From the NCBI RefSeq assembly GCF_035594765.1, contig NC_085845.1:174794897-174858896 (forward strand): DNA of 64,000 nt. Direction: 5' to 3'. Position numbers and translations under genes: made by a program. The notes under the pieces are model-generated. The model saw only the letters and a list, made by a program, of their open reading frames with translations, was not told the origin of the DNA and did no database searches. Positions 1 through 63,607 of this stretch are shown one piece after another (the stretch's first letter is position 1; each line of letters starts with the position of its first letter). Source of the stretch: Anolis carolinensis (taxonomy: Eukaryota).

Positions 1-840
1 ATGCACTGGTAGTCTACAGAGCTATGTAATATTTAGCCCAAAACTAGTCTGAATAAGAGACAGCTGGAAAATATGTAATCCATCAAAATCAAGAGAGCCA
101 CAGTTCCCATCAGCTAACTAGAGTTAATAGGACTTGGAATCCAATATCCTCTGGATGGAAACAAGTTGCTCAGCTCATCCTAGAAAAGAAGTGGGGAAAC
201 TCTGATTCTCCTTGTTTGGCATGTCAGCAAACAGAATTCCCAACTGCAAGGCATTCTTGGACTTGGACTTCAATGTATAAGGAGAACCAAAATCCCCACT
301 GCCTTGTCCTGGACCTAATTCTCAAATCATTTTCTGCAGAAACCAACACAGTGATTTAAACACAGCCTCAACAGTGTCTCAAAAATGTCATAACAGAAAA
401 CAAAGCCCTTTTATTTCCTGAGTTCTAGCTCTAGAGGCCAATCTGCTTCTAAGGATGAGAAACTCTTGGAAAAGCTACTTTATGGACCACCACTCCCAGA
501 ATCCCCACATTGCACAGCCCATCGTTTCTGGGAGCCACAGATTAAAAAAGTAATATTTCCAAAGTCTGATGTAGAATGACAGTGTCTGTTCCCATGAAAT
601 AATGTTGTTATACATAGAAATCAAGGCAGATATTGGCATTTTCTTAAAAGATACAGGAACTGTGCCTCATTTTCCCCAGTCCCTTCCAGGGAGAGATTTC
701 ATTAGGAGAAACTGACAGCAACCGCTACACTTTCTGTTTTGATCAATGGTTTTAAGAACACCTAACTCTAGATTGGATTTCAGCCAAGCACTGGACTCTG
801 GCACAAAAACAGGCATTTTGAATACTCCAGCTTTAAGTTT

Positions 841-893
841 CTAATCCTCAAGGCAGGGGAGGGAGAAGGATTGATGGTGATAAGCAATGCCTG
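841..893 (-). CDS. KCTD17: Candidate KCTD17 exon 7 (possible alternative terminal exon)
   Basis: Pyrimidine tract plus tandem acceptor (ttcatcttCAGCAG). Phase-1 join from exon 6 gives (A)GIAYHHQSFSLPCLED*, sharing FSLPxL with the recalled mammalian exon. Minus-strand AATAAA at 410-415. Confidence 0.4.
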
Positions 894-2484
894 CTGAAGA
901 TGAAAAACCAAAGTAACGTGGGAGGAGGGACTCGGTTCAGATATTTTGGGGTTTGTCCCAGGATCCTTGTGGATACCAAATACATGGATGCTCAAATCCC
1001 ATGCAATACAAGGGTGTAGTAAAATGGTGCCCCTTACATCAAATGACAAAATCAGATTTTGCTTTTTGGATTTTTAAAAAAATATTTTCAAGTTGTGAAT
1101 AGGTTCATCCATGGATGCAGAATCCGTGGATATAGCGGGTTCACTGTACTATGCTCTGTTCCATCTCTTATCTCCGGATATCCATCCTCTTACTGTGCCA
1201 TTTCCCCAGACCACCTTGTGTACCTTGAGCAACCATTCTAAACGGCAGACTTGTTAAGCTAAATGCAAACTTGTATACCTCATTGCAAGCTGAGATCTAC
1301 AGAAGTTTACATTACAGAACATTCATTTTTTAGATCATATCAGAAACTATCTGCTGGGTTTAAGGCAGGGCTATAACAGCTGAACCAGAGAGCACATGCT
1401 TTGCATGCAGAACATGCCAGGCTCAATTGCCAACTTCTCCCAATAGTTAAGAACAAGAAACAGAAATGGGGAGAAACATGAATTTTTAGATCCCAGAGAG
1501 CTGCTGCTGCCTATCAAGCTGGTGCAAAGCCAAGGAGGTCAATGACCCGACTCACAAGAAAAGGGATAGAAACTGTGCATCTCTTCAACTGAAACTCCCA
1601 TCAGCCCTTGCCAGCTTAGTCAATGAAGACAAATGCTGGGGAATTGTAGTCCAGTGTCAACTGAAGGGATGCAGAATCCCTACCATATGGTAGGAAAAGG
1701 CAGGTATATATCTTCTCTCTATGTACTTTTACTGACCTCTATACACCTACTTTCAAAATGCACTGCTCTAGAGTTTTCTATCTCAGAAATATAGGAACCA
1801 CTATGGAAGAAAAATTCAGAACATGCATTGAGCTCAAACAGATTCTATAATCCAGGGCTTGGGATAAGGACCTTTTGGCTATATCTCCCAAACTTCCCCA
1901 GCAATAATGGCCAGGGGCTGTGCTGGTTGAAGAGCTCTGAGAGCTGTAGTCTAAAAAATGTACCCCCTTCAAATTCTGCTAGGATCCACCAAAAGAGCCC
2001 CAGAAGAACCAGGTGTTGAGAGTCACTTAAACAGGTCAGGGACAGGGATAGAAGACAAGCTGTAGGAGGTCAAGAGAAGATGAAAGTCACAGAAAAGTGA
2101 CATGCAAGGAAATAAATATCACCAAGATAGGGAAATATGCAGAACGGAAATAACAGAAGTGATGTGAATGGATCGAAAGGGAAGGAGGGGATAGGGAGGC
2201 AATGGCTAAACCCTGGGTAGATGAACTTGTTGTAATATTCAACATTTTAAAAACTGATTTACATCTACATTCTGCAATTGTCCAAAAAAAAAGCCACCCT
2301 CCCTCTTCCTTCCCCAGCTTCCTATCATCCTTTAGCCACCAAGTGTTGCTTTCCTCTTCCACTGGTGTTCTATCTGCCATCCGTTCTCCATCACTAGCAG
2401 CTTTCCTCCAGAAGGGAGATGCCCTAGATGGCTTTAGACGTGGGTGTATTTTTGTCAAGTGTTCCCCTTAGAGGTTTGCTGCAC

Positions 2485-2593
2485 CTTTTCCCTCCTCTGC
2501 TTCAGCTGACTCCTCTGCCTCCTCCTGCTCTGCTCCCTGCAGCTGCTGCTCCTGGTCGTTCTGCTCTTCTTGCTCCAGATCATCCTCTGTGCT
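2485..2593 (-). CDS. KCTD17: KCTD17 exon 6, acidic/Gln-rich segment
   Basis: cag|AGCACAGAG...AAAG|gtgcag, 109 nt. STEDDLEQEEQ...EAEEGK resembles mammalian STEEQLEEQQQQ...AQEK. Confidence 0.8.
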
Positions 2594-2792
2594 CTGCATC
2601 CCAGTGCCATGCAAAAGGAAGGAAAAGGAGGTATAACTTATGAGATCCACTTTGACTGTTTTGTCTCATCCATAAAAGCATATCAAAGGAATATATATAG
2701 ATAGTATTTCACCCTATCTATCTGAAGGTTTCAATTTGGGCTTTGCAATCTTCCTAATTCTGTTTCGGGAGTGCATGTGGCTTGATGGCTAA

Positions 2793-2945
2793 GGCCCCTT
2801 CCACACAGCTGAATAAAATCCCACATATATTCCAGTGCTTTTAACTGGAATATATGGTAGTGTGGACTCAGATAATCCAGTTCAAAGGAGATATTATGGG
2901 ATTTTCTGCCTTAATATGCTGTTATATGACTGTGTGGAAGGACCC
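2793..2945. mobile_element. PIF/Harbinger-type MITE
   Basis: Imperfect TIRs ggccccttccacacag...ctgtgtggaaggaccc, TAA on both sides. Related copies near 29835-29909, 37618-37692 and 38081-38103. Confidence 0.7.
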
Positions 2946-3810
2946 TAAAAGGCTGAAATAAATACGTTCAGCGCTCCACACTTATAATTTCAACTTTTGC
3001 AGATTTGATTGTTCATGGATTTGATTAATACATTATTTCTAGAAATTTATAGGTCCATCAGTACAACTCCTTAGTCAACTTCTGCAGGAAATTGATCAGA
3101 GAGTTATACAAGCCATATAACCCATAATATCAAGGCAGAAAATCCCACAATATCTGCTTTGAATTGGGTTATCTTTGTCCACACTGCCATATATTCCAGT
3201 TCAAAACAGAAAATGTGGGATTTTATTCAACTATGTGGTTATGTGCCTTAGAGATTCCTAGAAAGCTCACCTTAAGCACCACACCAATTCCATAGTTCAA
3301 ACACACATATGCATCCAGAGTAGTTCTAAACCAGGTTTTTAATCTGGGAAATATATGAGTTTATCTTATAGTAGTCAATAGCTTTTGAAGGACTGATCCT
3401 AGTCTGTTCATAAGCACAAGAAAAGTATAGGCATTTTTTCATGCTTTACAATTGAACCCTACATTTTGGCAACTAAGGGTTCTTAGATATTTTCACGATG
3501 GAATTCTGCCTACAACAACCAGTTAAACAGTCAGCATTAAGCCTTTTCAGTTCCTAGCACAGATTTTGAAGCTAAATGCTATGCCTCTCATTTCACATGG
3601 AAGGAAACCTGTAGATCTGGGTTACTGCATGATTGGAGGAAGGGGTGGGTATGGGAATTTTAGTCAGAACTATAACTTTGCTAAGATCTGTGGATCTCAG
3701 GTCTCCAAAGAAAAAAGTATTTCTTAACAAGTATGCCACTTGACATCTGTAAACAAGGCACCAGAGAAAATAGGTTGCTTAACATTTGAGAAGGTGATGA
3801 TTGCCCTTAC

Positions 3811-50194: not shown

Positions 50195-50267
50195 GTGCCC
50201 ATGGACACGGCCTTCCCAACTCCTGCCGCCACATATCATGAAATCACAATGGCCGATGGTCCAGCAG
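50195..50267 (+). CDS. TEX33: TEX33/CIMIP4 small 5' coding exon
   Basis: Pyrimidine tract, tag|GTGCCCATGGAC...CCAGCAG|gtagg, 73 nt. Phase 1 out matches the next exon. Confidence 0.7.
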
Positions 50268-50688
50268 GTAGGTGATGTGACAAGAGAAAATCTGTGACAG
50301 TCTTCATTGTGAGGGATCACACATCCTCATATTCAGTAAATTTACCCTGTACATGCTGACCACCACCCCCAACATCCAGAATTCCAAATTCAAAAATACT
50401 CCAAAATCAAAAATTGCCCATATGGTGGTTGAAATACTGATCTCTTTGCTTTCCAGTGGTTCAATGTACATAAACTTTGTCTCATGCACAAACTTATTAA
50501 AATATTGTGCATGAAATTGCCTTCAATTATATATATAAAGAGTATGTGAAATATAAATGAATGTCCTACTTACCTTGCCTCATATTTCCCAGTTCAAGGC
50601 CCCATGATATGTGTGTGACTGGTTGCAGGTTTGTATGAAAAGAAATAAATATTCTTGTCATGAAAACAAATAAATATCCAGACAAAAT

Positions 50689-50692
<4 letters not shown>

Positions 50693-50763
<71 letters not shown>
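50693..50763. repeat. Compound (CT)n(AT)n microsatellite
   Basis: Seen directly. Confidence 0.97.
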
Positions 50764-50766
<3 letters not shown>

Positions 50767-51313
50767 AATTAATAGATGGACTGATACTTTGTGGCTGAGA
50801 TCCTGCACTGGAAGATAGTTAAAAAGATATATTTATTTGTTTATAGATCCAAGAGTACAGTCTCGAAGAGACAGCTAAAATGCCCACTGTAAATTAACAG
50901 CTGCTTTAATATTAGTTAATATTTGATCATCAAATACACTGCTGGTTAATATGCTGGAAGTGGCTCAACAACTTGGTGGTTCAGTGTTTTGCCAGTTTTT
51001 CCCAGATCTTCCTTAGGAAAGACGACACCCCAAACTTGCCAAACACCCCAAATCCATGGCCCTGTAGGAGGGGAAAGGGAAGATGTTCTGCTCAGGAATA
51101 ACTTTATGATGTATCTTCAAATGCAGGATCTCAGCCACCAAGTATTAGTTGGAAAAGAAAGCAGAAAGCTGAGATGAGGGAAACAGAATGGAACAGCAGT
51201 TGAGAGGAAACCTATCTGGGACTCTGGGCAGAAGTATTCCTCTTAAGATATAAGAACACTTCAGTAATTATGTTGTCAGCCCCAATTTCCATACATTACT
51301 TTCTGTTTTCCAG

Positions 51314-51927
51314 AAATGCCTGGATATGGAAACGAGCAGGTCACATCCAACAACAAAAGACCCCTTACCAGGAGCTCCAGTAGGACCTCCCAGAAGATCT
51401 CCAGCAACCTAGCAGAAGACATAACTGTTATGGGTAGACCCCCAGCAATGCCACAGGCATCCCCTTCTGCACAGAATTTCCAGACAGGAAACCTCAAACA
51501 GAATCTGAGGCCCAGATCCCCTTCCTCCTTATGCATTCACAGTGGATCCCCTGGGATGAAGGATAGCCCAGACAGCACAACTCCCAGGGGAGGAGGAAAT
51601 CATCATAGTGGGAGACTCACAAATGCCAGACAGGCTGCCAATTGTACCCAAGAGGACATGGAAGAGTCCTTTTGTGAAACTGGCAGGCAGCATCGATCTC
51701 TTGGGACCCCATTACTTGGATCCTCCCGAAAAGTCCTAAAAGGCAGCTGTGAAGAAATGAAAGAATCTGGAAACATGTTGAGTGCCAAAGAATCCCTGAC
51801 CTCAAGTAGACAAGATGTGAAAGCAGAAGGAAAGCCCCTTTTGGAGCAGAAGAACAATCTAATACCTGCCAATATCAAAGCCAAGTATGGCACAACTGGT
51901 GTGGAGAAACTGGTTTCTGAGGAGCAG
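51314..51927 (+). CDS. TEX33: TEX33/CIMIP4 large exon
   Basis: ttccag|AAATGCC...GAGCAG|gtaag, 614 nt. Ends NLIPANIKAKYG...LVSEEQ, like mammalian IIPNNIRHKFG...LVSEEQ. Confidence 0.88.
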
Positions 51928-52267
51928 GTAAGAAAAAAAAATATCCTACATTTGTTAGAATGCTTTGGTCACCGCAAATGCAGCTCTTTTTCATTTGGAA
52001 ATATCAAATGCCAAATTGAGAACCACATTTTTGATGCCACACTTTGCATTGACATTATCAGGTGGTCCTTAGTTGTGGACATTTCAGCTTCAAATGAGTT
52101 ACAAGAGATATTGGGTCTGTTTTGTAGAAAAGAAACACCTGGGACATCTCAAAGGTCTGGCAAAAGCCCAGAACAGAATAAATGTTCCTTTGATACTGAA
52201 ACCACGGTCTGATTGTCCCAAGCTCACCAAATATTCAGTTTGACTCCTCCATGCTTATGTCTTCCAG

Positions 52268-52418
52268 GCACGCCGTGCTCTCTGTGAGGCTGGACTGATT
52301 CAAGGGCAAAAACGACTCAGCGACTGGGCATTCAAGCCACTAGAGAATCCCATGGCATCTTCACCTTATGCTGATTATTATGAACTAGGTTACAACCTGA
52401 GGTCCAACATTTTCCAAG
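52268..52418 (+). CDS. TEX33: TEX33/CIMIP4 exon
   Basis: cag|GCACGC...CAAG|gtaat, 151 nt; ...GQKR...ADYYELGYNLRSNIFQ. Confidence 0.93.
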
Positions 52419-52939
52419 GTAATAATAATCTGTTATGGTTTGGCCCCTAATACCATTTGAATTGGCCTTGCAGTTTTGACATTACAACAATCAACTACCA
52501 ACTTTTCCTATTCTAGAGTCTGTGAATGGTCAGAAATACTACCTTAAAAAAATAAAAAACCAGGATCAGTTTACGCCAGACAAGAGAGAACTGAAATTGT
52601 ATGCCTTTGGAACAGGGTATTGGAAAGATGTAGAGCAAGAAACATTAATATTTGTGAAATGGGCAAATGGCTAGAGTGGGGCAGCCTTTAACACAGCTTT
52701 CATGTGTGGAAACAGCTGGCAATATTTTTCATGACACTTAGATAAATGATTTCCTACTAACTGCTGCAAATCCAGTGCTTGGAAATGTTACTTTTTTGGA
52801 TTTCTGTTCCCAGAATACTTCAGGCAGCATGTTTTTTCTGACTATGATGGCTGGAAAATTCTGGGAAATGTAGTTCAAATAAAAGAGCCCTATTCTTAGC
52901 TTTATCCAGTCAAACAGCTCTTAAAGACAAATAGCATAG

Positions 52940-53490
52940 GCTCCGCTGTCAATTTTTTTCAGCCGCAACATAACAGCAGCTGTCGAAACCCAAAACCCGG
53001 CTGCTTTTGGTTTCATTGGAGTGCAGGGAGGAGGCAGCTGCTAGAAAGGAAAGGATCCCAAAAGGGATCACAGGAAAGAGGGTTTCTTAAGCCTGTGCCT
53101 TAAACTTGGTCTCCTCTAAAGGGAGAAGGGAAAGGATAGCAGAAAGGGCAGAATCTTAAGGCCTTGCCTTAAACCTGGGAAGCCCCCCATTGCCACCAAT
53201 GGGCTGGACTAAAAATGAATCTTTTAGCTTCCCGGATCAAAAACGGACTTCAGTCCTCTCGAATTCAGGAGGCTCCTGAAAAACGGATCAGGTCCTCCCA
53301 CCGAAATCCGGGGCAGCGAAACAGATAAAAGTTTACTCAAGCCTACTGTTTAGAACTTGCCAATGAACATTCTTTTCATAAAAACAGTAGTTTTGTTCCT
53401 CCTGAACCAGCAAACCTTTAGCTTAGAAAACTCCAAACTGTTACTCACATTCTTTTAGCAAACCCAAGCAGTCACTTCCACCATCTTGAG
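52940..53490 (-). mobile_element. Possible L1-type LINE 5' UTR fragment
   Basis: CpG-retaining segment starting on the minus strand with a YY1-like caagatggtgg. Resembles recalled squamate L1 5' UTRs; no ORF support. Confidence 0.4.
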
Positions 53491-53600
53491 GCTTTCTTGT
53501 AGGCTATTATTTCTTGCAGATGGCAGTACTAGTACTAGTAGTAGTACTAGTAGTAACAGCAGCAGCAATAGTTTCTTCGGCCTACTTCAAGGTAGAAATC

Positions 53601-53738
53601 TTTTTGTATCAAGAGTGACTTTGAGAAACTGCAAGTTGCTTCTGGTGAGAGAGAATTGGCCGTCTGAAAGGACGTTGCCCAGGGGACACCCAGATGTTTG
53701 ATGTTTTCCCATCCTTATGGGAGGCTTCTCTCATGTCG
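53601..53738 (-). mobile_element. Anolis SINE2-type (Vingi-tailed) SINE, 5'-truncated
   Basis: A-tail at the left edge; 13-bp TSD caaggtagaaatc at 53588-53600 and 53739-53751. Confidence 0.8.
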
Positions 53739-55003
53739 CAAGGTAGAAATCAGATGCCATTAAACTGGAGATCCTAGCAATCTTAGTCAAAATAACTGGT
53801 GGTGTAGGAAGGTGTAGTCCAAATTGTGGGTAGCTACATGATCTCCATTCTTTGCCTACTAGCAGAATTGGCAGATTTGAACTGGATATTTCAGTGGAGT
53901 TTTTAGCTGCCATGTGATACTCAGTAATTCATATGTGATAGTGTACACAGAAAGCAATTACCATACTTACATAGTTACGCAGGGCTCAGTAGCAAAGAGT
54001 TCACAGAAGAACAAGCTAGGTTGTTCTACTCCATCCTCCAGTTCAACCTAAACCTTCCCATATGGACAAGGGTATATTAGTAATAAAACAAAACAAAACA
54101 AAACAAAAATCCCTTGAGATATTCTTCTTATTGGAAAACACTGAATGTTCAACTGCCTATTTATTTAAATTATTTTTACCCAACTAACCCCTAATCCTAA
54201 CTCTACACCACCTGCCAACAGGTTGCACAAGAAGAATAAGAAAGAAGACAGCTTCTTGCCTACAGGATTTAAAATCTGAAAGAAAACACAAAAAGATAAA
54301 GGACTGGGGTGGAAAGGTGATCATTATAAGCAGGCACCAGTTCTTATGCTCGATAGCATTTCTTTGAGCTTAACCTGAAAGCATTTCAGAGAGGAGAGGA
54401 ACCAAATGAGAGCTGGTCTTTCAGCATACGCTATAAAGTAGTCATGCTTTCATCTCTTCTGCAGCTTGATGGGATAGCTATTGCCAGGTGACAATTGACA
54501 TGGCTAGTTTTTCAATGGAAATTTTCTCCCAGTGTCCTCACTTTCATCCCTCTAAAGACAGCTAAAAAAATCAGTTGATTTACTTGCAAAATCACTTCTA
54601 CAAGTCCAAGGATGGGAACTTCTAGCCTGTGTGAATTCCCAACTTTCAGCCAGCTTCTCCTTGCTGTTATCTCCTATCAGTGATGGAAGATAAAATAGCA
54701 TTCACAGTAATAAAATGGGTTGTTTAAAAGTTAATGTTTTAAAAGCCTTTCAATGAGCACTGCAAGGTGAGAAACTGGGCAAGCCTTGGAAGAACTAGTC
54801 AATCTCTGTTCATAGCATGGTGTGAAGAGGGCCCTACGGAGGAAGGTCTATTAAAGAGGCAGATAGGAGCAGAATGAAATGGAGTTAGGCCAGTCAGAGG
54901 CAGGGTGAAGATGGGCATCTGAATAGAGCTTTGGGAGCTGGAGTCATAGAAAGGTTCCAGGGGTTACTTTTTTGTCTAATTGTTATACAATACATCTTTG
55001 CAT

Positions 55004-55242
55004 ATCGCTTCTGGTGTGAGAGAATTGGCCGTCTGCAAGGACGTTGCCCAGAGGATGACAGGATGTTTGATGTTTTACCACCTTTGTGGGAGGCTTCTCT
55101 CACGTCCCCACATGGGGAGCTGGAGCTGACAGAGGGAGCTCACCCGCTCTCCCTGGATTCAAACCGCCAACCTGTTGGTCAGCAGTCCTGCCAGCACAAG
55201 GGTTTAACCCATGGTGCCAAGTCACTCGTGACACGAAAAAAA
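55004..55242 (+). mobile_element. Anolis SINE2-type SINE with inverted 5' part
   Basis: Body antisense (about 55005-55218), tail plus A-run sense (55218-55242), TSD atctttgcat on both sides. Confidence 0.8.
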
Positions 55243-55654
55243 ATCTTTGCATGTTTTATTTCCTACACTTGTTTGAATGTTTTACTCTAATAACTGATAA
55301 GGAAAACTAGTCACACTTTATCAGACTGAACCTTAGTAATCAATACACTACTGTGATCACCTTGAGGCAGAAGCATTAGATCTAAAGTGGATCCTGATAG
55401 TTAGCAGGGCAAAGTGGTTCCTCCTCCCATAGTCAAATAAGTTGTAGTGAGCTACCACTTCAAAACATCAGAAATGATCACTTTCTGTAAAAAAAAAAAT
55501 CCCCTGATATAAACACGGCCACAAGAAAAAAAAATAGTGAGTTCAGACCATTCCTAAGATATATCACTATGCATGACACTTCTTTCATATTTTGAAGGAC
55601 CAGTTCTTTTTTCTCTCTCCTCCAGCCATGCCCTGGGATGCAGTTCAGAGATGA

Positions 55655-55828
<174 letters not shown>

Positions 55829-56374
55829 TAGATTTTGAGGAGATCAAAGAAAAGGAGGTCAAAAGCAAATGCTGTATCAGTCAGGTACCTTCCCTCAAAT
55901 CTGTAATATGGGGATAATAATAATACCCCAATGATTTACAGGGTTATTATAAGGATTACAAAGATAATGCTATGGATCACTCAGAAAAGAGAGCTATATA
56001 TAAATACTTAGTATTATTATAATCTAAACATTTGGATTTAACCCAGTTCAGTGCTTACAAAGCTCACATCACACGCTTGTACACATATTTAAAGAATCTT
56101 GTGCATTCTTGTTCCCATTATCGATGGGAATAATAATCCTACCACATGTGTTAATTCTCCATGACTGGTTAGAATTGCAGCATTGTTTTTATCCAAATGA
56201 TTACATGTGTAGTTGGTTTTCCTCTACCTTCAAACCACTAAACACAAATCTCTGCCTCTTGATGCCTTGACCCTTTGTCTTTATTGGCCAGGACCCAAAC
56301 TTTTCTAAAAGCAACCTTTCAATTCTAGATCTTGCAAATAGATCCATAATTTAAAAAATCCAAACTGTTTTTAA

Positions 56375-56479
<105 letters not shown>

Positions 56480-56816
56480 GAGGGCATAAAAGAGGTCTGC
56501 AAGTCCTCTGTGAAAGATATGTGTTCTCCCTACCAGTGGAATAAACGTCTTGCAGACTCTGGTTATGTGTGTTCGCTATGCATGTTGATAAAGCAGCAAG
56601 TGAAGTTGGTTCTCCAGGACAGGGAAGAAAATTTTCAGTCTAGAAGTACTTAAGGAATTCAGCTTTATTGAGGACAACATGCTCATCAACTACTCTGCAT
56701 AGGCCTAAGAGAGCTGCCATAGTTTCAGAGAAACCCAAGACAATTGTCCTGGTTTCAGTTTTTTCCCCTCCCTTTTCCCAGAGTTTTGTTCAAGTTTTCT
56801 AAAAGGGGCCATGACA

Positions 56817-58089
56817 CAGGGCCGGCCGGAGATAAATTTATATGTAAAGCGAGGGGGGAAATTGCGCCCCCCCCCCCACCGGCGCCGCGGGAGGCGTGGC
56901 CATGTGCCGCGGGAGGCACATGGCCACGCCTACCGCGGCGCCGGCGGGCCCCGCCTCCTGCTCCCTGGCCCCGCCTCTCACGTAGCGTGGGAGGCGGGGT
57001 CACGGCGAGCAGCGCGGGAGGCGGGGCCAGGGCTGGCCCCGCCTCCCGCGCAGCTCACCCCGACCCTGCCTCTCACCCAGCGTGAGAGGCGGGGCCGGGG
57101 CGCACAGGCCGGGAGGCAGGGCTCCGCCCAGACGGGGCCTTGCCTCCCGCCCCGCGCGGCCTGGGCTTTTCCAGGCAGGCCGACTGCACTGGAGGTCCCT
57201 GCAGGCCGCGATCGCGGCCTGCAGGGACCTTCGGTGCAGTCGGCCCGCCTGGTAAAGGCCAGACGGGCGAGGCTGAGCTGCGTGGGAGGCAGGGCCAACC
57301 CTGGCCCCGCCTCCCACGCAGCTCACCCCGACCCCGCCTCTCACGCAACGTGAGAGGCGGGGCCGGGGCGCACAGGCCGGGAGGCAGGGCTCCGCCCAGA
57401 CGGGGCCTTGCCTCCCGCCCTGCGCGGCCTGGGCTTTTCCAGGCAGGCCGACTGCACCGGAGGTCCCTGCAGGCCGCGATCGCGGCCTGCAGGGACCTTC
57501 GGTGCAGTCGGCCCGCCTGGTAAAGGCCAGACGGGCGAGGCTGAGCTGCGTGGGAGGCAGGGCCAACCCTGGCCCCGCCTCCCACGCAGCTCACCCCGAC
57601 CCCGCCTCTCACGCAACGTGAGAGGCGGGGCCGGGGCGCACAGGCCGGGAGGCAGGGCTCCGCCCAGACGGGGCCTTGCCTCCCGCCCCGCGCGGCCTGG
57701 GCTTTTCCAGGCAGGCCGACTGCACTGGAGGTCCCTGCAGGCCGCGATCGCGGCCTGCAGGGACCTTCGGTGCAGTCTGCCCGCCTGGAAAAGGCCAGAC
57801 GGGCAAGGCTGAGCTGCGCGGGAGGCGGGGCCAACCCTGGCCCCGCCTCCCACGCAGCTCACCCCGACCCCGCCTCTCACACAACGTGAGAGGCGGGGCC
57901 AGGGCGCACAGGCCGGCCATCCAGGGCCATCCCAGCCGGCCATGAGCTCGCTCGTCACCGAACAGGCCTTCCTGTTCGCCGGCGAGTGAGCTCATGGTCC
58001 CCGCTGGGAGGGGGGAAGCCTGACGGCGCCCCCCGGGCCCTGCGCCCGAGGCGGCCGCTGACGCGGCCGCCTAGTAACAACCGGCCCTG
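56817..58089. mobile_element. Non-autonomous hAT (Tip100-like) DNA transposon, 1273 bp, GC-rich, hairpin-packed
   Basis: TIR CAGGGCCGG...CCGGCCCTG; perfect 8-bp TSD CCATGACA at 56809-56816 and 58090-58097. Confidence 0.92.
57033..57917. repeat. 268-bp tandem array (about 3.3 copies) inside the hAT element
   Basis: Equivalent motifs recur at 57033, 57301, 57569 and 57837 with few differences. Confidence 0.95.
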
Positions 58090-59461
58090 CCATGACATAA
58101 TGAACAAAAGCACATTTCTAAATGAATAAAAAGGTAAGGCAAATTCAAATGCTTTTCACACTTGCTTTTGAGCAATGAACAGAACATTTGTCAGCTCCAC
58201 TTGCTCACGTTTCACTTTTTTCAGCTTCTTTGTGTGCCAGATATGAAGATGTTTTAAAGTCCTGGTCAATTTTTCAAAAATGCACTTTCAAAAAGTGATT
58301 TTAAAACAAAATGCTCACCCATTTGCACCAGTTAAATTCAATGGGTACAGTGGTTCCTAGTATGGAGATGGCAATGTGTTTGCCTACTCTACAGATCCTT
58401 AAGATCTCAGAAAAAAGGAAATGGCAGCCCTAATTCAGCCCTCAGGTGGTTGAATAAAGATGCCTGTTAAAGATAAAGAGGAAAACAGTAGCAGCCCTGA
58501 TTCAGAAGTCACATAGCTAAACATAGATTAAAACCCAGATTTAAAAAATTAAGCTCTAGTATTGCTGGTTTTAGATGAATGAATCTAACAGTTATTAGCT
58601 TCTCCCACATTCAGTTAAACCTTCATGTTCTTTCCATCATAAATATGAAGAGATGTGTGCATTTGGATAAATTCTTATCAACACCACAGTAACACGAAAC
58701 TTTCATTCATCTCTGATCTTCAGCATTCACACCATTTGATCTTTAGAAATCAGCAAATTTAGTTTTTTCAAGGCAGAAGGTTGATTCTTATCACCTGTTC
58801 ATATCAATAGTTGGTAGGAATTCAAAAGGTAGCAACTGGAAAACTAAATTGAACTATACAAAATTGCTAGTTTATGTGGTGGGGAAAGAATACCAAAAAA
58901 GCCAAGGTTAAAGGAAACAGAATAAGAAGAGGAAATTGCTTCCTTTTTTCAGAGAAAATATCCTCGGCAAGTAGCATTCCTAAACTCATTATAATCATCC
59001 CGTATCCATTGAACCGTTTCTCTATCTTATCTGCTGTCAAACATCTGTGTATCTCCCATACAATCTCTTACTTATTGCAAATAATTTGTGTGTATGTTCC
59101 TTGGTGGCAGCAGCTGGTAGCTTCCATGTCATCAGGGCAGTCTCTGTGTTTTAGGTTTTAAGAGACAAGTGCTTTCCAAGGTGCTGAGTGCCATTCAGGG
59201 CCTTGGATAAATGCTTTGGAATCAAACCTAGAGTGGAATCCATCAGCCAACATGTTTTTCAATAGATTATCAGTGCAGGGTGTTACTGAGGTCTTTGGAG
59301 CACTGCTATATATCATCTTGAATGTATCAGGAATGCAAGCTAGGGTATTCCTACCATGATGGCTTGGAAAGGTTTAAAAAAAACCCACAATGCCTGGGAT
59401 CCCCTGGATTCTGGGACTTGTAATCCAAAAATCACATTCTAAGCACTGCCTACCAGGTTTA

Positions 59462-61903: not shown

Positions 61904-62981
61904 TTAAAACTCAAGTCTTGGCAGAGGTGAAATAGTTGTCTGCAGCTTGCTTCCAACAGAGTTGGCATCATCAAGAGGGTTTGTGACTTTGGAGCCTGTT
62001 TCTGAAAAGCCATGTCCCAGAGTTCCCTTGGGATTCTTGAGGGGTTCGTTGTTTAACTTGAAGCTAGGAAAGAAGCAGTAATCTCCCACTTGGCTTAAGA
62101 AAATGGGGCTCTTGTTGTCAGGGTTGAATATAAAAAATCCCTTGTTGTGCTTGGGTTCCTCGGTGGAGAGACCAAGTCCTTCCTTCAGTGTAGATCCTGG
62201 GGTTGCAGGAAGGCTCATCACATAGTCGTCAAATGCTTTGGGGGGTGTTACTGAAGGAATAGCTAGCATTTGTCCCTTTGTTGGTAGCACAGTGTCTGGT
62301 TTCTTCTGATCCATCATTGAGCTTGAGAGATCTGCACTTGTTTCTGGCACATCTGTGGCCATCCTACTGCAGGCAGGCATCTCTTTCTCTGAGGCCACTA
62401 CAGGTATCAAATGTAAAGAGCCCTCTACTTGGCTCACTGGTAAATTTTCAGTCGCAATGTAATCCAATGGTCCATTTTGACCAGAGTTGTTTGTACCAGG
62501 AAGATGTTGTGTTCCCCTTGTTTTGTTGTCTTCTTTCACATATGTATCCCTTTGAGATCCTTCTTGTCTTTTCAGAAGTTGCTGCTTCTTTTCCCCCTGC
62601 CCATCACTTATTGTAAGAAAAGATGGAACTGCCTCTTTCTCTTTCTCTACTGGTAGCTGCTGGGGGTACAAGCAATGGGGCAATTTCATATGCTTCAAAG
62701 ACATATATATTTCTGTTTTTTTTGATGGTACAATTTGCACATCCTGTGAAACATCACGTACAGAAGATTCTGGTGGAAGGTGTAAGTATGGGCCATCATA
62801 ATCAAAGATCTGAACCTGGTGACTACTGTGTATTGCCTTTTCAACACTTTGAGTCAAAAATTGGCCAGCTTTGCTTACATTTGGAAGTTTGATTTCTTCC
62901 ATATCCTGAGAGACAAGTGAATGCTGTTCTGTTTTCCTTGACTCAGCTGGAAGAGACTCTGGATGGGTCACTGGCATTTCC
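61904..62981 (-). CDS. CSF2RB: Cytokine receptor common beta chain (CSF2RB or a tandem paralog), last exon, cytoplasmic tail
   Basis: ctgccgcag|GGAAATG, phase 2. FDYDGPYL, FDDYVMSLP and LSQVGDYCFFP match recalled human FDFNGPYL, FEGYVELP and QQVGDYCFLP. Convergent with TEX33 as in mammals. Confidence 0.85.
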
Positions 62982-63607
62982 CTGCGGCAGAGAAATAAAT
63001 GACACAATGTCAGTCAATACATAGAGATTGTCGAACAGAACACTCGAAGACTGAGGTGAAAGATGAAACCAAAAAGGACAATTTCTGGAAGAGTGGGTGT
63101 GGTTTCCTTGAGAGAATGCCAAGATAAAAGAGTTTTTCAAGAGACCCATGTGGGCAAAGAATGGATTTTTAAAATAGTTTTAGTGATGTCACTGCAAATT
63201 TTGAACACCTGAAATGTTGATTTATTGATAGTTTCTTGTTTTGCACTTCTGCAATTGTGCAATTTTCAAAAAAAAATATAAGAGGAATTGAATGGGAGGA
63301 GACAACAGCCACTCATGTAATGAGGAAAGAATCACAATTTAGCTAGAAAAGGGTGGACGGGATCTTGTATGATGGAGGTGAATAAATTCGCCATCTTCTT
63401 AAAAAACGAAACACCACATAATGCCATGCAAAGAATATGATTCCATACACTCCCCTCGCCCTTTGTGGGAAGAAATCTTAAGGAGCATTACAGTGATGTT
63501 TTTGGAACCCCAACTTTGAGCTAAAGGGGCCACCTTTGGGGTTGAGACTCACAGTTTAAGAAGTAATGCTTTAAACAAGAGTAGATATCTCAGCTTTGTA
63601 TGCTCAC

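What the first reader, a model, noticed from the sequence alone, without database searches (positions are those of the whole stretch)
56809..58097. Very young non-coding hAT transposon built largely from GC-rich hairpins
Seen: 9-bp TIRs and a perfect 8-bp TSD bound 1273 bp of CpG-dense sequence in an AT-rich, CpG-poor context. Most of the interior is inverted repeats: a left hairpin (56879-56944), four hairpins per 268-bp unit, and a right hairpin (57940-57997). No transposase is encoded. Known: 8-bp TSDs and CAGGG ends indicate hAT, Tip100-like elements. Inference: the lack of CpG decay implies recent activity or protection from methylation. The serial-hairpin cargo may be a product of template switching, or a structured RNA/ssDNA module carried by a possibly undescribed family. 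This is the best candidate for a new system in the window.
Basis: partly seen in the sequence, partly recalled or inferred. Interest (0 to 1): 0.8.

Follow-up and report, generated by a model that had tools for sequence, protein, structure and literature searches.

The report
Young hairpin-packed non-coding hAT transposon
A 1,273-bp non-coding cut-and-paste (hAT-type) jumping gene made almost wholly of GC-rich DNA hairpins sits just behind the TEX33/CIMIP4 gene of the green anole; the insertion is real and very recent, but it is one copy of an abundant repeat family, so it is ordinary in kind.

Summary
A perfect 8-bp target duplication (CCATGACA) and perfect 9-bp terminal inverted repeats (CAGGGCCGG) bound 1,273 bp at 56817-58089. 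The element has 75% G+C and CpG o/e 0.75, against 0.20 in the rest of the window. It holds 3.4 copies of a 268-bp unit with four hairpins each, plus flanking hairpins. It encodes nothing recognisable.

The insertion is young. A contig of another public run joins 56807 to 58089 and skips exactly the element plus one target copy. The orthologous Anolis sagrei site is also empty.

It is not a new system. Hundreds of contigs at 95-100% identity pile onto the element in four runs, and some carry other flanks or other module junctions. So it is one copy of a high-copy, structurally plastic family.

Its ends match, at 10 of 12 positions, the TIR published for the young orphan anole families hAT-N6/N7/N8_AC. 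This scan has already noted and followed up similar hairpin-array hAT elements on other DNA of this genome.

I found no support for a structured RNA: both strands fold alike, no Rfam family reaches threshold, and covariation is at chance level. Differences between units and between hairpin arms are mostly CpG transitions. Youth, not protection from methylation, explains the CpG richness.

The parts
56809..56816 (.). Left copy of the 8-bp target site duplication CCATGACA
   Evidence: A single copy stands at the empty site in run X1. A. sagrei has a single related octamer, CAGTGACA.
56817..56825 (+). Left terminal inverted repeat CAGGGCCGG. Extended to 12 nt it reads CAGGGCCGGCCG.
   Evidence: 9/9 against the reverse complement of 58081-58089. 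Unique in the window. 10/12 to the published TIR CAGAGSCGGYCC.
56826..56874 (.). Left subterminal spacer: an AT-rich stretch, then a G6 ... C11 run
   Evidence: Other family copies diverge from this copy before about 56864-56870 (loose ends).
56875..56948 (.). Left hairpin: 34-nt arms, 94% complementary, 6-nt loop
   Evidence: (I25) and the fold.
56963..57005 (.). Extra B-type hairpin ahead of the array. With A1 and B1 it forms a 164-nt higher-order palindrome, 56950-57113.
   Evidence: (I7, D3).
57007..57916 (.). Tandem array, 3.4 x 268 bp. The units start at 57007, 57275, 57543 and 57811 (the last is partial). Each holds hairpins A, B, C and D.
   Evidence: TRF, 96%; D1, D2; pairwise identity 95.1-98.1%; fold, z = -18.
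57161..57262 (.). Hairpin D of unit 1, a 102-nt palindrome with a perfect 38-bp core at 57193-57230. The same hairpin recurs at 57429-57530 and 57697-57798.
   Evidence: (I20-I22).
57938..58000 (.). Right hairpin.
   Evidence: Fold.
58049..58074 (.). Small perfect 10-bp-stem hairpin holding two NotI-type octamers
   Evidence: Other family copies diverge after about 58055-58058 but end in the same terminal GGCCGGCCCT (loose ends).
58081..58089 (-). Right terminal inverted repeat, CAGGGCCGG on the minus strand
58090..58097 (.). Right copy of the target site duplication CCATGACA
56387..56479 (+). Context: last coding exon and TAA stop of TEX33/CIMIP4. The element starts 338 bp behind the stop.
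   Evidence: tblastn of the A. carolinensis protein P0001, sequence, Pfam TEX33 on the large exon.

Best explanation
This is a recent, still polymorphic insertion of a non-autonomous hAT-superfamily DNA transposon in Anolis carolinensis. It lies 338 bp downstream of the TEX33/CIMIP4 stop codon and is one copy of a high-copy, young family.

**Shown**
- The element has canonical ends: a 9-bp TIR starting CAGGG and an 8-bp TSD.
- It encodes no protein.
- An allele exists that lacks exactly the element plus one target copy.
- The interior is a chain of DNA palindromes built from one roughly 16-nt GC-rich motif (CGYGRGAGGCRGGGCC) that alternates in orientation. These are grouped into a 268-bp unit that was tandemly amplified 3.4 times.

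**Inferred from established hAT biology**
- A transposase encoded elsewhere binds the ends and excises the element.
- It re-inserts the element with an 8-bp staggered cut.

**Inferred for the interior**
- The hairpin array is a by-product of DNA-level rearrangement. The likely steps are repeated fold-back or template-switch inverted duplication during gap repair or replication, then unequal exchange or slippage of the 268-bp unit.
- It is not a selected RNA or protein-coding cargo.
- CpG richness reflects youth. The CpGs are already decaying.
For: - **Ends:** TSD and TIR are both perfect.
- **Empty allele within the species:** in run X1 a 2,440-nt contig at flank depth joins 56807 to 58089. 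It skips 1,281 bp, which is 1,273 + 8, and 9 letters are shared at the joint.
- **Empty site in a sister species:** in A. sagrei the flanks align at 93% and 82% and are 7 nt apart, with a single target octamer.
- **Family copy number:** 809 contigs of X1 and 753 of X17 lie on the 2.5-kb stretch. Summed depth in the element is 175-3,479 (X1), against 8.16 in the flanks, all at 95% identity or more.
- **Other copies:** some contigs carry other flanks (X20 record 24). Others carry other module junctions or unit numbers, such as 57277 to 57884 skipping 606, and 57852 to 56882.
- **No coding capacity:**
- **Motif:** the 16-mer occurs 17 times in both orientations, and only inside the element.
- **Nested palindromes:**
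- **Strand symmetry:** RNA minimum free energy is -1171 kcal/mol on one strand and -1210 on the other.
- **Covariation:** one covarying pair, matched by 165 of 500 shuffles.
- **CpG decay:** 9-10 of 16 inter-unit differences are CpG transitions.
- **Literature:** anole hAT families are young and mostly non-autonomous. Orphan families have the TIR CAGAGSCGGYCC, 0.6-2.4% divergence and about 1,000 copies each (PMC3014272). 25,165 polymorphic hAT insertions are reported in green anole populations (PMC7561263).
Against: - No transposase partner with this TIR was identified, so the superfamily rests on TSD length and terminal bases only.
- This single TSD does not fit the hAT target consensus nTnnnnAn, nor the NNTNNANN given for hAT-N7/N8.
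- No contig of the four runs bridges a flank into the element at this locus. The filled allele is therefore seen only in the window itself.
- The origin by template switching is inferred from the architecture and was not observed.
- I could not compare the element with Repbase or Dfam consensus sequences.
Confidence: 0.85

Rival explanations
1. The serial hairpins are a selected structured-RNA module carried by the transposon, for example a source of pre-miRNA-like, hairpin-RNA or piRNA species.
For: - The hairpins are of pre-miRNA size and have very low folding energies.
- There are many sub-threshold Rfam miRNA-model hits.
- Runs guessed to be RNA hold family sequence at high depth.
- One C-G to T-A double change occurs in hairpin A.
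Against: - Every Rfam hit is far below its gathering score, and hits fall on both strands alike.
- Both strands fold equally well.
- Covariation is no better than shuffles, at 165/500. This rests on only 3 units.
- Stem mismatches are uncompensated CpG transitions.
- The kind of the 'RNA?' runs is a guess, and multi-copy DNA gives the same picture.
Confidence: 0.06
2. The element acts, here or family-wide, as a mobile CpG-island-like regulatory or protein-binding array. One version is near-consensus GC-box or transposase-binding motifs repeated 17 times. Another is that this copy alters 3'-end formation of TEX33/CIMIP4.
For: - The element has 134 CpGs in 1.27 kb and o/e 0.75.
- The repeated motif contains GAGGCGGGGCC.
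- The insertion lies 338 bp after the stop codon, between AATAAA signals at 56540 and 58125.
- Contigs of X17 lie on both sides of the site.
Against: - There are no functional data.
- The insertion is polymorphic and absent from A. sagrei, so it is not a conserved gene part.
- The CpGs are decaying as in methylated DNA.
- The two ends share no subterminal motif beyond the 9-bp TIR.
Confidence: 0.05
3. It is a cut-and-paste element of another superfamily with 8-bp TSDs, such as P, a MULE or Merlin-like, or it is moved by an unrecognised transposase. On this reading it is not hAT.
For: - No autonomous partner is known even for the published look-alike families hAT-N6/N7/N8_AC.
- This TSD does not fit the hAT target consensus.
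Against: - An 8-bp TSD with a short TIR starting CAG(G/A)G is the hAT signature, and it is the basis on which the anole families were classified.
- By general knowledge, MULEs usually make 9-10-bp TSDs and P elements have other termini.
- hAT is by far the most active superfamily in this genome.
Confidence: 0.04

Closest known systems
Orphan non-autonomous families hAT-N6_AC, hAT-N7_AC and hAT-N8_AC of Anolis carolinensis (Novick et al. 2010, PMC3014272)
   Same: - Same host, 8-bp TSD and no coding capacity.
- Very young: 0.6-2.4% divergence.
- About 1,000 copies or more each.
- The TIR CAGAGSCGGYCC matches this element's ends at 10 of 12 positions on each side.
- No autonomous partner is known.
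   Different: - TIR position 4 is G here, not A, and the 11th or 12th base differs.
- Published lengths are 288-810 bp, against 1,273 bp here.
- The paper does not mention palindromes or tandem units.
Hairpin-array / palindrome-packed hAT elements already noted by this scan in the same genome (s1-528333, s1-517351; first-stage notes s1-528414, s1-555040, s1-528499)
   Same: They are described as young, non-coding, CpG-rich hAT elements of 0.5-1.7 kb, built from stacked or tandem palindromes. They are abundant as a family, and at least one is absent from other individuals.
   Different: This copy has a 268-bp, four-hairpin unit and lies at the 3' end of TEX33.
Classical internally rearranged non-autonomous hAT elements (Ds-type derivatives, hAT MITEs such as Mar) and fold-back-rich transposons such as Galileo (P superfamily, PMC4168063)
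   Same: They are mobilised in trans through short ends. Their interiors are unrelated to the transposase gene. They carry internal tandem repeats and inverted duplications, attributed to repair or recombination.
   Different: - Those are other hosts and other sequences.
- Galileo has long TIRs and belongs to the P superfamily.
- MITEs are usually shorter than 600 bp and AT-rich. This element is 75% G+C and almost entirely palindromic.

Membership tests
hAT superfamily, non-autonomous element | 8-bp target site duplication | tested here: met
   CCATGACA on both sides, 8/8. The empty allele skips 1,273 + 8 bp.
hAT superfamily, non-autonomous element | Short terminal inverted repeats beginning YARNG (CAG/TAG type) | tested here: met
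   CAGGGCCGG, 9/9. This fits the TIRs tabulated for anole hAT families.
hAT superfamily, non-autonomous element | Presence/absence with an intact single target at the empty site (cut-and-paste insertion) | tested here: met
   The X1 contig and the A. sagrei orthologous site.
hAT superfamily, non-autonomous element | Target consensus nTnnnnAn (Ac group) or nnnTAnnn (Buster group) | tested here: inconclusive
   This single TSD fits neither consensus well. A consensus needs many copies.
hAT superfamily, non-autonomous element | Mobilised by a hAT transposase (BED finger, RNase-H-like core, hAT dimerisation domain) with matching ends | not testable with these tools
   No transposase is encoded in the element or found in the window. 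The anole genome could not be searched.
hAT-N6/N7/N8_AC (Novick et al. 2010) | 12-bp TIR CAGAGSCGGYCC | tested here: inconclusive
   10/12 on each end: related, not identical.
hAT-N6/N7/N8_AC (Novick et al. 2010) | Similarity to the family consensus over the interior | not testable with these tools
   No Repbase or Dfam consensus was available, and the paper has no held supplements.
hAT-N6/N7/N8_AC (Novick et al. 2010) | High copy number and very low divergence | tested here: met
   Hundreds of contigs at 95-100% identity lie on the element in X1 and X17, with depth 20-400 times the flank. This is a crude measure, not a copy count.
Rfam miRNA / structured RNA families | Score at or above the family's gathering threshold, on one strand | tested here: not met
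   The best hit scores 58.3 bits against a threshold of 90. Hits fall on both strands.

The most novel reading that the evidence does not exclude
The hairpin array may not be debris. It could be the working part of an orphan transposon family. One version is that cruciform or ssDNA hairpins built from the repeated 16-nt motif recruit a still unidentified transposase, or raise transposition efficiency. Another is that they yield hairpin-derived small RNAs that regulate the family. Either would explain why palindrome-built variants of many lengths are the ones that multiply in the green anole without a known autonomous partner.
Probability: 0.07. Interest if true: 0.6.

Novelty: new member of a known kind. 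Interest (0 to 1): 0.25.

Why it matters
- **Ongoing activity:** this is a clean, fully documented example of recent or ongoing hAT activity in a vertebrate. It has perfect ends, and the empty allele is seen both within the species and in a sister species.
- **Marker and possible gene effect:** it adds a polymorphic 1.3-kb CpG-rich block 338 bp behind the stop codon of a testis gene. That is usable as a marker. It can also be tested for an effect on 3'-end formation.
- **DNA fragility:** the near-total palindromic build, including three perfect 38-bp palindromes, is a potential source of replication trouble and rearrangement.
- **Restriction-site clustering:** the element concentrates rare-cutter sites. 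It holds 13 of the window's 14 FseI, NotI, AsiSI and SbfI sites. If the family is abundant, that could bias SbfI- or PstI-based RAD data in anoles.
- **Limit:** none of this makes it a new kind of system.

Tried and rejected
- **Rfam at permissive E-values:** only generic sub-threshold miRNA-hairpin hits on both strands. Rejected as evidence for an RNA gene.
- **Element ORFs:** Pfam found nothing. Two searches of the 5.8-billion-protein collection with element ORFs also found nothing. I had hoped these would lead to other copies, so I could not fetch other genomic copies.
- **Exact-pattern scans:** two 30-32-mers against JGI metagenome contigs and IMG/VR found no hits. This gives no cross-taxon or vector lead. 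A blank there says little.
- **blastn against PLSDB plasmids:** no match. A cloning-vector or bacterial origin for the many rare-cutter sites is rejected. The TSD and the multi-copy state in anole runs argue the same way.
- **Canonical G-quadruplex motifs:** none in the element.
- **Shared subterminal motifs between the two ends:** none beyond the TIR.
- **Other copies or CAGRGSCGGYC ends:** none in the window or the A. sagrei locus.
- **Exact look-up of the A. carolinensis TEX33 protein,** to fetch a second assembly of the locus: not on record.
- **Literature:** searches for the TIR string and for GC-rich palindromic hAT elements in Anolis found only Novick et al. 2010.
- **Spliced gene model:** I did not build one. 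The exons were located one by one with tblastn.
Full report
**What is there.** The window switches from about 36-41% G+C to about 72-80% G+C between 56.8 and 58.1 kb.
- The block is bounded by a perfect 8-bp direct repeat, CCATGACA, at 56809-56816 and 58090-58097.
- Just inside lies a perfect 9-bp inverted repeat, CAGGGCCGG, at 56817-56825 and 58081-58089.
- Similarity between the two ends stops after these 9 bases.
- The 1,273-bp element has 134 CpGs and CpG o/e 0.75. The rest of the window has o/e 0.20.

**Interior.**
- Tandem Repeats Finder gives one array at 57007-57916: period 268, 3.4 copies, 96% matches, no indels.
- Each unit folds into four hairpins. For unit 2 (57275-57542) these are A at 57275-57324, B at 57326-57368, C at 57369-57425 and D at 57426-57536.
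- As ssDNA the unit folds at -145.4 kcal/mol. Shuffles give -73 ± 4, so z = -18.
- The left 190 nt hold a 34-nt-arm hairpin and a B-type hairpin, z = -9.3.
- The right 190 nt hold a hairpin of about 60 nt and a perfect 10-bp-stem hairpin, z = -8.9.
- Hairpin D has a perfect 38-bp palindromic core in all three full units.
- The 16-mer CGTGAGAGGCGGGGCC occurs 17 times within 2 mismatches, in both orientations. All occurrences lie inside the element.
- Hairpins A, B and C are this motif and its complement in the order + - / - + / + -. Hairpins therefore nest into larger palindromes, for example 56950-57113 and the 42-nt arms around each B loop.

**It is an insertion, and a young one.**
- In public run X1, a 2,440-nt contig at the depth of the flanks (8.16) lies on 56200-56807 and continues at 58089-58700. 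It skips 1,281 bp, which is the element plus one target copy, with 9 letters common to both sides. A hAT excision normally leaves a footprint (general knowledge), so this is most simply the allele that never received the insertion.
- I do not know whether X1 is an individual other than the one assembled. Either way, the empty allele exists in the species.
- The gene just upstream let me fetch the orthologous A. sagrei locus. The window's flanks align to it at 93% (55603-56816) and 82% (58099-58632). The two blocks are 7 nt apart, and the site carries one octamer, CAGTGACA. The insertion therefore postdates the split of the two anoles and has not reached fixation.
- One caveat: no contig of the four runs crosses from a flank into the element at this locus. 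The filled allele is documented only by the window itself.

**It is one copy of an abundant, plastic family.**
- On the 2.5-kb stretch, 809 contigs of X1 and 753 of X17 were laid at 95% identity or better, nearly all inside the element.
- Summed depth in X1 is 175-3,479 there, against 8.16 in the flanks. The tool warns that this is no copy number. I read it only as 'tens to hundreds of copies'.
- Some contigs run from the element's left end into other flanking DNA (X20 record 24).
- Others end in a different right subterminal sequence that still finishes GGCCGGCCCT (loose ends at 58055/58058).
- Others join modules differently, such as 57277 to 57884 and 57852 to 56882. Family members therefore differ in unit number and module order.

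**No cargo gene, and no sign of an RNA gene.**
- All ORFs of 60 codons or more are Pro/Arg/Gly/Ala-rich readings of GC-rich DNA. They have no Pfam domain and no relatives.
- Rfam at E ≤ 1 returns 181 hits. They are almost all miRNA-precursor models, all far below gathering scores, and they fall on both strands alike. Any long GC-rich hairpin would give this.
- As RNA, the + and - strands of the whole element fold to -1171 and -1210 kcal/mol.
- On the three full units with the predicted structure, 98.5% of cells pair. Only one pair shows a change on both sides: columns 9/42 of hairpin A, which are C-G in unit 1, T-A in units 2 and 3, and C·A in unit 4. 165 of 500 shuffles do as well. Both of those sites are CpGs.
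- Three sequences give little power, so this is absence of support, not disproof.

**CpG.**
- Of the 16 columns that differ among the units, 9-10 are CpG to TpG or CpA.
- Mismatches inside the hairpins are mostly G·T or A·C.
- At several places other family copies carry C where this copy has T, for example at 57067.
- The sequence behaves like methylated DNA that has only just begun to decay. Youth is a sufficient explanation for its CpG density.

**Identity and context.**
- The organism is Anolis carolinensis. Exons of its annotated CIMIP4/TEX33 protein (P0001) lie on the + strand at 50195-50266, 51313 to about 51936, 52265-52420, 55697-55822 and 56387-56476. Identity is 100% wherever the alignment does not overrun an exon edge.
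- Pfam TEX33 matches the large exon.
- The stop codon TAA is at 56477-56479. AATAAA signals stand at 56540 and 58125.
- The element starts 338 bp after the stop. It lies between TEX33 and a convergent gene that in A. sagrei carries IL3Rb_N.
- I could not decide whether the site lies within a long 3' UTR. Contigs of X17 lie at 56385-56678 and 58100-58630, but the kind of that run is a guess.

**Comparison with what is known.**
- Novick et al. 2010 (PMC3014272) catalogued 37 hAT families in this genome, nearly all non-autonomous and young.
- Three 'orphan' families, hAT-N6/N7/N8_AC, share the TIR CAGAGSCGGYCC. They have 8-bp TSDs, 0.6-2.4% divergence, about 1,000 copies or more each, and no known autonomous partner.
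- This element's ends, CAGGGCCGGCCG and CAGGGCCGGTTG, match that TIR at 10 of 12 positions.
- Bourgeois et al. 2020 (PMC7561263) count 25,165 polymorphic hAT insertions in green anole populations. A polymorphic copy is therefore expected.
- I found no paper that describes the palindrome-array architecture.
- This scan has already recorded it several times on other DNA of the same genome. Two follow-ups reached the same verdict as mine: the structure is real and striking, the family is abundant and young, and the kind is known.

**Mechanism.**
- Shown: the ends, the TSD, the empty site, the multi-copy state, the lack of coding capacity and the nested-palindrome build.
- Inferred from hAT biology: mobilisation in trans by a transposase that recognises the ends, and integration at an 8-bp staggered cut.
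- Inferred from the architecture and from the variable module junctions in other copies: the interior arose by repeated inverted duplication (fold-back or template switching during repair or replication) of a short GC-rich motif, followed by tandem amplification of a 268-bp block.
- The loop of hairpin A is inverted in unit 1 relative to units 2-4 (columns 24-26). That fits flip-flop at a palindrome.

**Verdict.** This is a good specimen of a known kind, not a new system. Interest is low to moderate.

Noticed in passing
window 50195-56479 (+): TEX33/CIMIP4 gene. Coding exons lie at 50195-50266, 51313 to about 51936, 52265-52420, 55697-55822 and 56387-56476, with stop TAA at 56477. The large exon sits in a 298-codon open frame (51316-52212) that runs on into the intron.
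   Followed up: partly
window 61904-63007 (-): A 367-codon open frame without a Pfam hit, on the strand convergent with TEX33. In A. sagrei the gene at this position carries IL3Rb_N / fn3 domains (CSF2RB-like). This is probably the long cytoplasmic-tail exon of that receptor.
   Followed up: partly
window 18400-18850: The only other CpG-rich island of the window (G+C 0.64-0.72, CpG o/e 0.64-0.78). It looks like a promoter and first coding exon on the minus strand, flanked by CCTT and CTC microsatellites. It is unrelated to the element.
   Followed up: no
window 56817-58089: The element holds 13 of the window's 14 rare-cutter octamers: FseI 2/2, one of them inside the left TIR; NotI 2/2; AsiSI 3/3; SbfI 6/7. 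It also holds 6 PstI sites. A high-copy polymorphic family like this could distort SbfI/PstI RAD-seq data in anoles.
   Followed up: partly
window 56385-56678 and 58100-58630: Run X17 (kind guessed as RNA) has low-depth contigs that begin 2 bases before the start of the last TEX33 exon. It has further contigs beyond the insertion site. This hints at a long 3' UTR or read-through across the site.
   Followed up: no
window 57029-57033 versus 57297-57301: The loop of hairpin A is inverted in unit 1 relative to units 2-4 (GGG versus ACC at columns 24-26). This fits flip-flop inversion at a palindrome.
   Followed up: partly
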